From assembly GCA_900088475.1 (NCBI GenBank), contig FLMG01003853.1, positions 23,059-87,058 of the forward strand: a stretch of 64,000 nt of DNA, in the 5' to 3' direction. How positions within the stretch are numbered: position 1 is the stretch's first letter; the number at the start of each line of letters is the position of its first letter. The notes below the pieces were generated by a model. That model was not told where the DNA came from. It worked only from the letters and a program-made list of their open reading frames with translations, and did not search any database. The DNA comes from Hyphochytrium catenoides. Taxonomy: Eukaryota > Protista > Hyphochytriomycota. Positions 58,699-61,758 of the stretch are shown here, one piece after another. The position numbers and the translations under genes are program-made.

Positions 58699-61600
58699 CT
58701 AATAGAACGAGATGCCCCCACCCGCCACTAATGGCATGTCCTCTCCTCTTCCTGTTTGGTCATCATTCGCATTCGCCCAAGAAGAATCCCGATAGAGATC
58801 ATACATCCAACCCAAAAGGAGAATGCCACAGGTAGAGAGATAGGCAAAGCCTGAGAGAGGCTTGTGAGTGTAGAAGCGATGAGCTCCAAAGATTCCCAGG
58901 GGACTCCGAAGGAGAACGGAGTAGTCGTTTTCTTCCAATGTCTCCGGAAAAATCTGCCTGTTGGCTGCAGCCGTTAGCAGTCTGCACCGTCGTATATCCT
59001 GCCACCAGCCAAAGCCACCCAGACCGAAACTGAATAGGTAGAGGCAGCCCCATCGTGGGCGGCGAAGGTAGAAGTGGTGTGCCCCACACCAGCCATAGTA
59101 CCGTGTCAAATACTCTACGCGGGATAATTCTCGCTCTTCACTTTCTTCCCCTTTCTCCTTATCTTCTAGGTACATTTTGGTCCTTCTCCCTCCGTCTGCT
59201 CTTCCTGACGAGTTAACAGGGAGACTTGCCTCGCTCCATCTTGAAGTATCCTTCGACACTACAGAGCGCGATAGTGATTTCTTCTCCTTTCCTAGCCCCT
59301 GTGCTTTTGAGACTGGCACTGAGGACGCCCTGGCGCCCTGGGAAGGAGCGGGTGAAGAGAGGAGTTTCTTCTCTGGCTTGGGCTCTATAGTTGTCGCTGC
59401 TGCTTTGTCAGCTCCTGCGGTAGGTCTTGGTGTTGTTGGGCTAGCAACCTTTGTCTTTCCGTCAGCCCTCTCTTCTTTCCGTTCAGCTGCCTGCTCGTCC
59501 ATATTCCTACTGTTCTTTAGAGCCATAAGGTAGTCAAGATCAAAGTCTAATGTCTCCTGGGTAGCGATTGAGCTCTCGGCCTCCTCTAGGTCTAACATGT
59601 GCATAATTGAAGGAGTCTCCGGCTCCTCTCGGTACAGTAAGCACATCGTAGGCTGAACGATTGTAGGCAGAGGCTCGGAGCTGTTCTTGGCTCGTTTAGT
59701 TGTTACTGAACTGGAACTCAGACTGCTTGATGATATTGATTCTGACTCTGTGGACTTCGTATCTACCTCCTGCTCAGACATAAAATAGATGAGGATACCA
59801 TCTATCTAACCATCCCAACGATAAAAGACTAACGAAATACGCGTGTTCACACGGATTGATGCACAGAAGGGTATATGTCTCTTCCATGGAATGGTCAAGG
59901 CCTAATGAAGCTCACCATGATATCAGCAAGATACTCCGACTGCGAGCTGGCTCCTTGGCTGTCTGTTATTGGAGATTGGGGTGTCTCCAGTCCCATCAGC
60001 TCATTGTTGATGTCGTCAAAGTTCTTCTTCTTCCTCAAGGCAGTCCGAGTAGAAGAAAATTCAAAGGGCTTCGATCTTGTCCTTCCTAGGACGTCGTACT
60101 TGTTTCCATTCTTCATCACTACAAAGACCTGTAGAAGGAAAGAGGGAGTCAACAAGTGCAAATACTTTCACTCTTTTCTCCTGCTTCTCCTTCCTCGCCA
60201 CTTCGCCTAACCTCCCACCTCCCTTGGTCTCATAGCCTCATTACTCTCGTCCACCTCTTTACCATAGCTATTCTCCTGCGCCCACTATTTGGCTCAACCC
60301 TAACGCTTTCATCTCCTAGCATCTTCATCAGGTAAGAGCTCCTTACCTCAAAACAAAATGTTACCGCGGCCTTATTTCTAGTTCGCTTCTTGTTTGTCTT
60401 TAATGGCTCTTCAAACTTCCACACCTCAGGATTGAATCGAACGGCGATCTCGTCGATGCTTGCCTCATTGTCCTCATAGATTTCGCCAATAAAGCACTGC
60501 TCCTCCAGATCTGCGTACTCCGACTGAGAAAGGACCGAGGGAAGCTCCTCTGGCGGGTTGAAGTTGATACGACCCAGGATCTTTGTCTCCTCCGGGTACA
60601 CGATGGGCCCCACAAGCCTACAAAGAACGCTGCTCTTGCACGCGCCCGGATTCCTGTGCTTGGCATCACTAAGTTTCATGGAAAAGAAGTCACCGAACTC
60701 AGCACAGTAGGGGAAGCATTGGATATTCCTCCTCGCGTTTCTCCAGTATTTCGTCAGAAAGGTGGTTTTGAACGTTACAGAGACAACGTCTCCTGGTGAG
60801 AGCTCATCTTCGGTGTAGGAAGATGTCGTGAAAGAAGAGACGGGTGCCGTTGGCGTTGTGTTCTGGGTAGGGGCCTGTTAAAAACAGCAAGGGGTTAGGT
60901 TTGGTGTGTGTACGAGCCAGTATGAGCTACAAGCTACGGCCCTTTCAAGGACTAGTTATAGCTGAAGAACGGTCAGTAGAGGAGCGTCAAAGAAGTAACT
61001 GCGAATCTTGTAAGAAGCAGGGACCAGTGAAAAGGAAGCACCAGAGGTACCTCTATCTCTTCCGCCACAGTAGAAAGAGCTTTCTTTGGCAACGTCAAAT
61101 GGACTGAAGAGGGAACCTTGCCAGTGTTGCACTGGCATATCCTTACTGCTCCCTTCAGACCCAAAGGGTTTCTAAACAGACCGCACTGTGGGCAAAAGTT
61201 ACAATACTGATTGTGCTTCTTTGGATAATGCTTCAGAAGAAAGTCATCGTAGGCCTGATTATCAACGAGTAGAGCGCGGTGAGCCTAAGAGAATTGGGAG
61301 ACGGACAAAAGGAGTATCACGAGACGCTACAAGGAAACACAGAATACCTTAGCAGCTTCCTCTTCGGACTTGAAGTTCCAGCCAATGCGCGTCGAAGAGT
61401 ACTTGGCACCCCAGGTGGCGCCGTTGACCCGGCTGACACCACGATACTGACTCTGCCGGGGCCTCTGAGCCTTCCTGGTAATCTTCATATCGTGGTCTGA
61501 CGCAGAAAGCTCGTCCACATCAGTTGCGCCATCGGAGGGCGTATAGACAATCGAAGACTCAGAAGTGCTGACATTATCATCAAAAGAATCTCCTGTCTCC

Positions 61601-61758
61601 ACACTGAAGTGGTCAAACGACAAGGACTCCTCGCTGTTCAGATAGTCATCTAGGAAGTCCTCGACGTCATTAAAATCAATGGAATCATCGATCCCATTAA
61701 AGCTCACGTCGAGGTCCGTCGAGGGAGAATTCTCCGGCGCGCCTACGGTCGTGGTCAT
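58699..61758 (-). CDS. AP2-like DNA-binding protein with Cys cluster and an uncharacterised central domain, probably fused to two C-terminal TM2 domains (5 exons)
   Basis: SQYRGVSR..WGAKY..SEEEAAK|AYDDF..NFCPQC (AP2-like); KYWRNARRNIQCFPYC..FCFE|VFVV..SKPFEFSSTRT. Phase-0 GT-AG intron 59915-59770 joins to the ORF carrying GAHHFYL..LYLFSFGLGGFGWWQD and GIFGAHRFY..YLSTCGILLLGWMYD (TM2). The start codon is uncertain. Confidence 0.7.

What the first reader, a model, noticed from the sequence alone, without database searches (positions are those of the whole stretch)
58699..61758. Candidate membrane-tethered transcription factor (AP2-like + TM2)
Seen: the ORF track splits this locus, but only ~110 nt separate the AP2-gene frame from the TM2 ORF. 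A phase-0 ATG|GTGAGC...GAGCAG|GAG intron (59915-59770) fuses them. The product is an acidic N-terminus, AP2-like domain, Cys cluster, central domain, long disordered linker and two TM2 hairpins. Established: SREBP, MYRF and plant NTL/bZIP factors are released from membranes by proteolysis, and animal TM2D proteins are linked to gamma-secretase/Notch signalling. Inference: a regulated membrane-to-nucleus signalling system that I do not know to have been described in stramenopiles.
Basis: partly seen in the sequence, partly recalled or inferred. Interest (0 to 1): 0.7.

Follow-up and report, generated by a model that had tools for sequence, protein, structure and literature searches.

The report
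Membrane-anchored AP2 regulator with TM2 anchor
This stretch most likely holds one five-exon gene for a gene regulator with two DNA-binding-type domains held to a membrane by a double TM2 anchor, a layout not described in the literature searched, but the key splice that joins regulator and anchor has not been seen in RNA.

Summary
On the minus strand there are an acidic N-terminus, a divergent AP2-type domain with a four-cysteine knuckle, a conserved 200-residue beta-sandwich domain, a roughly 260-residue low-complexity linker and two TM2 domains (Pfam E 2.4e-19). A GT..AG interval at 59915-59770 joins the frames.

The splice sites prove little, because 50 in-frame GT-AG pairs exist. No RNA run was listed, so the junction is untested.

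Comparative evidence favours one gene.
- A profile of the central domain finds 93 proteins.
- At least eleven carry the domain followed by two or three TM2 domains in one protein. Two are single transcripts and two are unbroken genomic ORFs.
- Oomycete relatives, and this genome's own paralogue, carry AP2-like module + central domain + a different four-helix anchor.
- This is the only TM2 locus found in the 61-Mb genome. It lies 113 nt downstream on the same strand, against about 1.7 kb to the next ORF.

Against: the closest relatives by the central-domain tree end just after that domain and look soluble.

The central domain has no Pfam family. Its model resembles velvet, NF-kB and STAT DNA binders only weakly (Z about 7).

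The scan had already noted the paralogue on other DNA of this genome (s1-371151). Cleavage and nuclear entry are inference.

The parts
61348..61758 (-). Exon 1: start codon, acidic N-terminus (25 D/E, 0 K/R in the first 90 residues), and the three beta-strands of the AP2-like domain (YRGVSRVNGATWGAKYSSTRIGWNFKSEEEAAK)
61255..61347 (-). Intron 1, 93 nt, GTATTC..AATCAG, phase 0. A 63-nt alternative ending at 61285 is also in frame but adds 10 residues that homologues lack
61051..61254 (-). Exon 2: AP2-like helix (AYDDFLLKHY) and four-cysteine knuckle (NFCPQCG...CQC, about 61129-61194). The 3' boundary is not verified by homology
60875..61050 (-). Intron 2, 176 nt, GTACCT..TAACAG. A model only, because the flanking linker is not conserved
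60347..60874 (-). Exon 3: linker and most of the conserved central beta-sandwich domain (from about 60796; KYWRNARRNIQCFPYC...H...C motif)
60129..60346 (-). Intron 3, 218 nt, GTAAGG..CTACAG, phase 0. The junction is supported by alignment to intron-free homologues
59916..60128 (-). Exon 4: last strands of the central domain (PFEFSSTRTALRKKK, to about 60024) and the start of the linker
59770..59915 (-). Proposed intron 4, 146 nt, GTGAGC..GAGCAG, phase 0, GC 0.42. It is the join between the regulator part and the anchor part. If retained, the frame stops after six codons (59897-59895). Not verified by RNA; acceptors at 59806, 59773 and 59767 are also in frame
58702..59769 (-). Exon 5: about 225 residues of low-complexity linker followed by two TM2 domains. 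The stop codon is at 58699-58701
58996..59094 (-). TM2 domain 1 (GAHHFYL...GGFGWWQD)
   Evidence: G000:C2721:82054-82152, 34.3 bits
58795..58899 (-). TM2 domain 2 (GAHRFYT...LLLGWMYD)
   Evidence: G000:C2721:81853-81957, 48.9 bits

Best explanation
One five-exon gene on the minus strand, 61758-58699, encodes a protein of about 808 residues. From N- to C-terminus it has:
- an acidic, activation-type N-terminus;
- a divergent AP2/ERF-type DNA-binding domain with a four-cysteine knuckle;
- a second, uncatalogued beta-sandwich domain of the velvet / Rel-homology / STAT kind, with conserved Cys/His and basic residues;
- a linker of about 260 residues that looks disordered;
- two tandem TM2 domains, that is four membrane helices.

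Inferred working: the TM2 pair holds the protein in an internal membrane, with both DNA-binding-type domains on the cytosolic or nucleoplasmic side. The regulator stays inactive until the linker is cut. Alternatively, retention of intron 4 produces an anchor-free form. The N-terminal part then acts in the nucleus.

Shown: the domains, their order, and the same layouts within single proteins of relatives.
Inferred: the splice at 59915/59770, DNA binding, membrane location, topology and release.
For: - Domains. TM2 scores E 2.4e-19 with two stretches. For the AP2-like module, a 17-row profile hits solved AP2 domains first: TEM1 E 5.7e-4, WRI1 0.009, ERF096 0.08. The model of the paralogue's module (pLDDT 86) is three strands plus a helix, and the six best Foldseek matches are all AP2/ERF.
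- Central domain. 93 relatives, 74 of them at E <= 1e-10. The model has pLDDT 93.9. Best fold matches are VosA velvet Z 7.1, NF-kB p52 Z 7.0, VeA, TonEBP and p65, plus STAT, p53 and NFAT by Foldseek.
- Fusion precedent. P0012, 14, 16, 17, 18, 20, 23 and 86 have the central domain plus 2-3 TM2 stretches by Pfam. P0025, 46 and 57 match by BLAST. P0012 and P0095 are MMETSP transcripts. P0017 and P0020 are unbroken ORFs on eukaryotic genomic contigs.
- Other anchors. P0001-P0011 all carry the central domain and C-terminal hydrophobic hairpins, and all but P0006 also the AP2-like module. The same-genome paralogue has the same layout.
- Position. This is the only TM2 locus found in the 61-Mb genome. 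It lies 113 nt downstream on the same strand, against about 1.7 kb to the next same-strand ORF and one gene per roughly 3.6 kb genome-wide (18,481 models in 65.7 Mb, PMC5795050).
- Linker length. About 264 residues, within the 120-314 range of the TM2-type homologues.
- Intron 4 has a GTGAGC donor, a CAG acceptor and lower GC than the exons.
Against: - No RNA evidence. No RNA run was listed, so the E4-E5 junction is a model.
- In-frame GT-AG pairs are plentiful here, 50 in all.
- In the central-domain tree this gene sits in a well-supported clade (97/95) whose other members end a few residues after that domain. P0026 is AP2-like + central domain and is followed by an unrelated secreted-protein gene. 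P0033 is an annotated 312-residue protein in assembly GCA_000520115.1.
- No representative combines the AP2-like module with TM2.
- The AP2 match is below Pfam's threshold: 13-15 bits against 33.3 on homologues, and no hit on the exon pieces.
- Fold matches of the central domain have Z below 8, which the tool warns can reflect a common arrangement only.
- No protease site or release signal was identified.
Confidence: 0.6

Rival explanations
1. Two separate neighbouring genes. The first is a soluble regulator of about 458 residues (AP2-like + central domain) ending VSFIRP* at 59895. The second is an independent 360-residue TM2 membrane protein starting at the ATG at 59781. This could be a gene fission or a chance adjacency.
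For: - The upstream frame has its own stop, and the downstream ORF has its own ATG.
- The closest relatives in the central-domain tree end just after that domain.
- Stand-alone tandem-TM2 proteins exist, for example P0103-P0105, one named 'TM2 domain-containing protein [Trichoplax sp. H2]'.
- No RNA evidence is available either way.
Against: - Only 113 nt would have to hold a 3' UTR, a poly(A) site, a promoter and a 5' UTR. The next same-strand ORF is about 1.7 kb away.
- The only TM2 locus found in the genome would sit by chance directly behind one of only two central-domain genes, in the order and on the strand seen in fused homologues.
- The stand-alone ORF would begin with about 225 residues of low-complexity sequence.
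Confidence: 0.15
2. One gene with two products. Splicing of intron 4 gives the membrane-anchored form. Retention of intron 4 gives a soluble, anchor-free regulator that ends six codons into the intron. The switch would then work by alternative splicing and not, or not only, by proteolysis.
For: - Intron 4 lies exactly between the DNA-binding-type part and the linker plus anchor, and it carries an early in-frame stop.
- Both soluble and anchored forms occur repeatedly in the family tree.
- Omission of the transmembrane segment by alternative splicing is a known route for plant membrane-bound factors (abstract of PMC9237531, listed).
Against: No transcript data are available. A retained intron with an early stop could equally be a target of nonsense-mediated decay. 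Nothing in the sequence marks the intron as regulated.
Confidence: 0.15
3. A fused membrane protein that is not a releasable transcription factor. The AP2-like and beta-sandwich domains could bind nucleic acid or protein at the membrane, for example tethering chromatin at the inner nuclear membrane, with no cleavage at all.
For: - No cleavage site, protease domain or MYRF-type self-cleaving domain was found in any exon.
- Fold matches of the central domain are weak.
- The anchors differ between family branches while the N-terminal modules stay the same. That fits a simple tether as well as a regulated one.
Against: - The acidic N-terminus is typical of activation regions.
- A long, apparently disordered linker between domains and anchor is typical of cleaved membrane-bound factors (established knowledge of SREBP, ATF6 and the plant NTL factors).
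- Basic clusters lie in and next to the central domain, KTNKKRTRNK and RKKK.
Confidence: 0.1

Closest known systems
Oomycete-type AP2-like + central domain + four-helix-anchor proteins, e.g. GLD92705.1 (hypothetical protein, Pythium insidiosum), and this genome's own paralogue at G000:C3884
   Same: - Same acidic N-terminus.
- Same AP2-like module with the NFCxxC...CxC knuckle, 40-56% identical.
- Same central domain, about 30-35% identical.
- A long linker and a four-helix C-terminal anchor.
   Different: - Their anchor is two long hydrophobic hairpins with no TM2 signature; here it is two TM2 domains.
- In the central-domain tree the window's gene lies in a different clade from them.
Central-domain + TM2-repeat proteins of uncultured and marine protists (P0012, P0014, P0016-18, P0020, P0023, P0025, P0046, P0057, P0086)
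   Same: - Central domain followed by a 120-314-residue linker and 2-3 TM2 domains in one protein.
- The TM2 region is 29-41% identical to exon 5.
   Different: - None of them has the AP2-like/knuckle module.
- They form their own clade, 97/91 support.
- Their organisms are not named in the sources.
MYRF / Dictyostelium MrfA (membrane-tethered factors with an Ndt80-type beta-sandwich DNA-binding domain)
   Same: A beta-sandwich domain of the p53-like transcription-factor kind sits N-terminal to a membrane anchor, with an N-terminal activation-type region. An ESM Atlas MYRF-like cluster is a weak structural neighbour, TM 0.47.
   Different: - No NDT80_PhoG, Peptidase_S74 or MYRF_ICA match.
- MYRF has a single transmembrane helix and a self-cleaving tailspike-like domain (PMC3742443, PMC3828593).
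- Here there is no such domain, and there is an extra AP2-like module.
Plant membrane-bound factors (NAC NTL, bZIP28/60) and yeast Spt23/Mga2
   Same: General logic: a DNA-binding domain at the N-terminus, a long linker and a C-terminal membrane anchor. Release is by proteolysis or by a transcript lacking the anchor (PMC9237531).
   Different: - Unrelated DNA-binding domains.
- Those factors use a single tail-anchor helix, not TM2 repeats.
- Release has not been shown here.
Animal TM2D1-3 (almondex family)
   Same: They share the TM2 domain (PF05154).
   Different: - From my own knowledge, the animal proteins have a signal peptide, a luminal N-terminal region and one TM2 domain with a DRF motif in the loop.
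- Here there are two tandem TM2 domains behind a cytosolic-type N-terminus, and no DRF is seen in exon 5.
- The three TM2 relatives that the word search returned are tandem-TM2 proteins.
- No evidence links this gene to Notch or gamma-secretase.
Velvet (VosA, VeA) and Rel-homology (NF-kB, TonEBP/NFAT) DNA-binding domains
   Same: Best structural matches of the central-domain model: Z 6.7-7.1 with 124-139 aligned residues. These aligned stretches are longer than the roughly 85-105 residues of most plain Ig-domain matches in the same list. Foldseek also puts STAT, velvet, p53 and NFAT first.
   Different: - Sequence identity is only 6-10%.
- Z is below 8 and rmsd is 4-6 A.
- No Pfam match.
- The family has its own invariant signature, Y-x-R-N...Q-C-F-P-x-C...C...W...S-x-x-F...R-x-x-x-R.
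- Membership is not established.

Membership tests
TM2 domain (Pfam PF05154) | Score above Pfam's gathering threshold | tested here: met
   Exon 5 scores 69.7 bits against a cut-off of 27.9, with two stretches. A six-frame genome search gives 48.9 and 34.3 bits, both over the cut-off.
TM2 domain (Pfam PF05154) | Two hydrophobic helices per domain with the G-x-H-R/H-F-Y and G-W-x-x-D motifs | tested here: met
   GAHHFYL...GGFGWWQD and GAHRFYT...LLLGWMYD are read directly in exon 5. Hydropathy is only moderate, Kyte-Doolittle below 1.6.
AP2/ERF domain (Pfam PF00847) | Score above Pfam's gathering threshold | tested here: not met
No hit on exon 1 or exon 2 alone or on the intron-free paralogue. 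Homologue P0001 scores 13-15 bits against a cut-off of 33.3.
AP2/ERF domain (Pfam PF00847) | Three-stranded sheet packed on one helix, and profile similarity to solved AP2 domains | tested here: met
   The family profile hits TEM1 AP2 at E 5.7e-4, then WRI1 and ERF096. The model has strands 19-23, 26-31 and 34-40 and helix 43-57. The six best Foldseek matches are all AP2/ERF, rmsd 2.0-2.5 A over 49-53 columns, but with E of 0.2 or more. This was tested on the paralogue's module, which is 40-46% identical to the window's exon pieces.
AP2/ERF domain (Pfam PF00847) | Sequence-specific DNA binding | not testable with these tools
   Needs DAP-seq, protein-binding microarray or EMSA.
Membrane-tethered transcription factors (functional class: SREBP, ATF6, MYRF, NTL, Spt23/Mga2) | DNA-binding domain and membrane anchor in one polypeptide | tested here: inconclusive
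   Met in homologues. At this locus it depends on the unverified splice 59915/59770, and no RNA run was listed.
Membrane-tethered transcription factors (functional class) | Regulated release from the membrane and nuclear entry | not testable with these tools
   No cleavage motif or protease domain was recognised. Needs tagging and fractionation.
MYRF family | NDT80_PhoG DNA-binding domain plus Peptidase_S74/MYRF_ICA self-cleaving domain | tested here: not met
   No such Pfam hits in any exon piece, the paralogue or the homologues scanned. There is only a weak structural neighbourhood, TM 0.47.
Rel-homology / velvet / p53-like beta-sandwich DNA binders | Fold match clearly above the background of plain Ig-like domains | tested here: inconclusive
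   Top matches are velvet and Rel-type domains at Z 6.7-7.1, with longer aligned stretches. Plain Ig and carbohydrate-binding domains follow at Z 6.0-6.8. Foldseek E is 1e-3 or weaker.
Animal TM2D1-3 / almondex | Signal peptide, luminal N-terminal region, single TM2 domain with a DRF loop motif (from my own knowledge of the family) | tested here: not met
   Exon 5 has two tandem TM2 domains and no DRF. The N-terminal parts are acidic or DNA-binding-type, with no hydrophobic leader. The three TM2 relatives returned are tandem-TM2 proteins.

The most novel reading that the evidence does not exclude
The central domain defines an old, uncatalogued family of protist DNA-binding proteins of the velvet/Rel kind. 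The family has repeatedly switched between soluble and membrane-anchored forms. In this reading the TM2 domain, whose molecular role is unknown (my own knowledge), serves as a releasable anchor for a transcription factor. The window's gene would be the only member found so far that keeps all three modules: the AP2-like module, the central domain and TM2. Its intron 4 sits at the exact switch point between an anchored and a soluble product.
Probability: 0.3. Interest if true: 0.75.

Novelty: new variant of a known kind. Interest (0 to 1): 0.6.

Why it matters
- **Few precedents outside the model groups.** From my own knowledge, membrane-tethered transcription factors are well studied in animals, fungi and plants. 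Two full-text searches found no paper on one belonging to oomycetes or their relatives.
- **A new candidate family.** This locus and its relatives point to a family with two DNA-binding-type domains, one of them with no Pfam family. The family has interchangeable anchors: TM2 repeats, a different four-helix anchor, or none.
- **Practical reach.** If the factor is real, it offers a stimulus-to-transcription route to test in Pseudofungi, which include major plant and animal pathogens. There the genes found are labelled only "hypothetical".
- **A context for TM2.** It would also give the poorly understood TM2 domain a concrete, testable setting.
- **Annotation.** Gene callers that stop at the intron-4 stop codon would split such genes. 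They would then miss the anchor.

Tried and rejected
- **RNA evidence.** The look-up of sequencing runs (kind rna) listed no run and its cap is one, so read laying could not be used.
- **Pfam on exon pieces.** Only TM2 was found.
- **Pfam on the intron-free paralogue.** Nothing useful.
- **Paralogue as a tail-anchored protein.** I first read it that way. Its stop codon lies inside a GTAAGT donor, and in-frame acceptors open 143 more codons with further hydrophobic segments.
- **Conserved linker motifs tying exon 5 to homologues' linkers.** Only weak hits: E 0.005 to the paralogue with composition correction off, and a PEKK-type motif at E 0.1. Nothing matched the TM2-type linkers. I did not use these as evidence.
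- **Is this TM2 specifically closest to the TM2 of fused family members?** The word search returned only three tandem-TM2 proteins without the central domain, so the test did not discriminate.
- **TM2 ORFs downstream of the closest relatives** (P0026, P0065, P0013, P0033). None found.
- **ESM Atlas feature search with P0017.** No usable hit.
- **Organism of the MMETSP homologue.** The printed taxid (87120) resolves to a fungus, which I do not trust. A paper search for the sample code found nothing.
- **Literature.** Two searches for a described TM2-anchored or oomycete membrane-bound factor found none.
- **Joined spliced protein.** Exons were handled one by one by reference. The scripts tested reading-frame continuity only, and no joined sequence was printed, saved or sent.
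Full report
**What is in the sequence**

The locus lies on the minus strand. Reading the three frames gives this five-exon model:

| Part | Window coordinates | Notes |
|---|---|---|
| Exon 1 | 61758-61348 | starts at the ATG at 61758 |
| Intron 1 | 61347-61255 | 93 nt |
| Exon 2 | 61254-61051 | |
| Intron 2 | 61050-60875 | 176 nt |
| Exon 3 | 60874-60347 | |
| Intron 3 | 60346-60129 | 218 nt |
| Exon 4 | 60128-59916 | |
| Intron 4 | 59915-59770 | 146 nt |
| Exon 5 | 59769-58702 | stop at 58701-58699 |

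- All four introns are GT..CAG and phase 0. The product would have about 808 residues.
The sequence reads ATC ATG|GTGAGC ... GAGCAG|GAG.
- Without splicing, the upstream frame stops six codons on, at 59897-59895.
- The downstream ORF has an ATG at 59781. That leaves 113 nt between stop and ATG.
- I make one correction. Intron 1 more likely ends at 61255 than at 61285. The junction EEEAAK|AYDDF then aligns without a gap to intron-free homologues.
- Intron 3 is likewise supported by alignment.
- Intron 2 and the exact acceptor of intron 4 cannot be fixed by homology.

**Is the splice more than chance?**

No, not by itself. A script found 50 GT-AG pairs that join the exon 4 frame to the TM2 frame without a stop. 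With the GTGAGC donor, the acceptors at 59806, 59773, 59770 and 59767 all work. The decisive test would be RNA. The look-up of sequencing runs listed no RNA run (none was listed, which is not the same as none exists), so read laying could not be used. Exons were searched one by one by reference. The scripts checked frame continuity only.

**The organism**

The window is G000:C2721, in a 61.0-Mb assembly of 4,759 contigs. The published assembly of that species has 4,758 scaffolds plus a mitochondrial genome, 18,481 gene models and a mean intron length of 208 bp (PMC5795050). That is consistent with the suggestion but does not prove it.

**The domains**

1. *TM2.* Exon 5 matches Pfam TM2 at E 2.4e-19 with two stretches. 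They map to 59094-58996 and 58899-58795. Both carry the G-A-H-H/R-F-Y and G-W-x-x-D motifs.
2. *AP2-like module.*
   - Pfam AP2 does not reach its threshold. There is no hit on the exon pieces or on the paralogue, and 13-15 bits against 33.3 on homologue P0001.
   - A 17-row family profile finds solved AP2 domains first: TEM1 E 5.7e-4, WRI1 0.009, ERF096 0.08.
   - The AlphaFold model of the paralogue's module (pLDDT 86) has three strands and a helix.
   - The six best Foldseek matches are all AP2/ERF domains, at weak E but with rmsd 2.0-2.5 A.
   - I read it as a divergent AP2-type fold. It is followed by a family-invariant N-F-C-x-x-C...C-x-C knuckle.
3. *Central domain.*
   - It has no Pfam family.
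   - A four-row profile searched against 1.84 billion representatives gave 93 proteins, 74 of them at E <= 1e-10.
   - The window's exons 3 and 4 keep 20 of the 21 columns that are at least 80% conserved. Among them are Y-x-R-N, Q-C-F-P-x-C, a third Cys, W, and S-x-x-F...R-x-x-x-R.
   - The model built on 57 rows has pLDDT 93.9 and pTM 0.88, and is mostly beta.
   - Foldseek ranks STAT, VosA velvet, p53/CEP-1 and NFAT first, at E of about 1e-3 to 1e-2.
   - The Foldseek-independent search ranks VosA velvet (Z 7.1, 124 aligned), NF-kB p52 (7.0, 139), VeA (7.0), TonEBP (6.9) and p65 (6.8). Plain Ig-like domains follow closely.
   - The tool warns that Z below 8 may reflect a common arrangement. 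"Velvet/Rel-like DNA binder" is therefore the best reading, not a demonstrated membership.
   - The nearest ESM Atlas cluster (TM 0.76) is an oomycete "hypothetical protein" cluster.

**Are homologues fused?**

- By Pfam, P0012, P0014, P0016, P0017, P0018, P0020, P0023 and P0086 have the central domain followed by two or three TM2 stretches (E 5e-16 to 8e-36).
- P0025, P0046 and P0057 match exon 5's TM2 region by BLAST.
- P0012, and P0095 from P0023's cluster, are MMETSP transcripts, so they are single mRNAs.
- P0017 and P0020 are unbroken ORFs of 800 and 851 residues on genomic contigs. Their neighbours are typical eukaryotic genes.
- Their linkers between the domain and the first TM2 motif span 120-314 residues. 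The window's model gives about 264.
- A second group has a different anchor.
  - P0001-P0011 all carry the central domain and two long C-terminal hydrophobic hairpins. All but P0006 also carry the AP2-like/knuckle module.
  - One of them is GLD92705.1, a hypothetical protein of Pythium insidiosum.
- The same genome holds one paralogue, at C3884.
  - I first took it for a tail-anchored protein.
  - My check agrees. Its stop codon sits inside a GTAAGT donor, and in-frame acceptors open 143 more codons with further hydrophobic segments.
  - The scan had therefore already met this family on other DNA of the same genome.

**Position in the genome**

- The TM2 search of the whole 61-Mb assembly finds only this locus. 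The central domain occurs in only two genes plus a 98%-identical short contig, probably the other haplotype.
- The sole TM2 locus thus lies directly behind one of two central-domain genes, on the same strand and in the order seen in fused homologues. That is very unlikely by chance.
- The 113-nt gap compares with about 1.7 kb to the next same-strand ORF (55419-56969). Genome-wide there is one gene per roughly 3.6 kb (from the numbers in PMC5795050).

**Evidence against**

- A maximum-likelihood tree of the central domain was built from 56 rows under LG+C20.
  - It places the window's gene in a supported clade (97/95) with P0026 and P0065, which have the AP2-like module + central domain.
  - The same clade holds P0013, P0015, P0032 and P0033.
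  - The window's row is only exon 3 and sits on a long branch, so its placement is not secure.
- All of those relatives end a few residues after the central domain.
- P0026 is followed 160 nt later by an unrelated secreted DUF7492 gene.
- P0033 is an annotated 312-residue protein in assembly GCA_000520115.1, with an opposite-strand neighbour.
- Soluble relatives therefore exist, so a soluble product of exons 1-4 has a precedent.
- That clade is only weakly (85/57) sister to the clade (97/91) holding all the TM2-type members.
- No representative combines the AP2-like module with TM2.

**Reading and odds**

I put about 0.8 on the locus being one transcription unit that can produce the fused protein. 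Within that, I cannot separate constitutive splicing from a splice switch, in which retention of intron 4 gives an anchor-free form. That the protein is a DNA-binding regulator rests on two fold-level assignments and on an acidic N-terminus with 25 D/E and no K/R in the first 90 residues. Membrane location, cytosolic orientation of the N-terminal part and proteolytic release are inferences from the class (SREBP, ATF6, MYRF, the plant NTL factors). No protease domain or cleavage motif was seen. It is not a MYRF, because it has no NDT80 or self-cleaving domain. It is also not like the animal TM2D proteins, as far as I know their layout.

**Novelty**

Two full-text searches found no paper describing a TM2-anchored factor or an oomycete-encoded membrane-bound factor. 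The one named family member is labelled "hypothetical protein", and so is the Atlas's nearest cluster. I rate it a new variant of a known kind: a membrane-tethered regulator with a new domain set and a new type of anchor.

Noticed in passing
G000:C3884 (L006:2724-5915, + strand): Paralogue of this gene, with an AP2-like module, knuckle and central domain in one 889-codon ORF. The stop codon lies inside a consensus GTAAGT donor at L006:5390. In-frame acceptors at 5480/5483 open 143 more codons with further hydrophobic segments. Simple ORF reading therefore makes it look like a tail-anchored protein when it is probably a two-exon gene with a four-helix anchor.
   Followed up: partly
G000:C4693:1243-1533 (L004): A 1,533-nt contig holds a 98%-identical copy of the first 97 residues of exon 3. 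It is probably the other haplotype of this locus, left unmerged in the assembly. The published genome reports about 2.75% heterozygosity.
   Followed up: no
homologues P0001-P0011 and L006, just after the central domain: A recurrent (L/M)PEKKK(V/I/L)K motif lies 10-20 residues downstream of the central domain in the oomycete-type proteins and the paralogue. It is a candidate nuclear localisation signal. The window's gene has RKKK in exon 4 and a PEKKLL stretch about 130 residues into exon 5.
   Followed up: partly
window 61255-61347 versus 61285-61347: Intron 1 has two in-frame acceptors, giving 93 nt or 63 nt. The shorter intron would insert ten residues (AHRALLVDNQ) into the AP2-like helix region. 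Homology favours the longer intron, but both could be used.
   Followed up: partly
window 55419-56969, minus strand: The next same-strand ORF is 516 codons long and is cysteine-rich, with repeated C-x-x-C-type motifs. It was not searched against any library.
   Followed up: no
P0103-P0105: The three TM2 relatives that the word search returned for exon 5 have four or five tandem TM2 repeats. One is named 'TM2 domain-containing protein [Trichoplax sp. H2]'. This tandem-TM2 class differs from the single-TM2 layout I recall for TM2D1-3 and looks unstudied.
   Followed up: no
central-domain family tree: Several well-supported clades of the family have no anchor at all. Some end in basic tails such as KRQxR, and others in acidic DDDLIP tails. 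The family seems to have gained or lost membrane anchors several times.
   Followed up: partly
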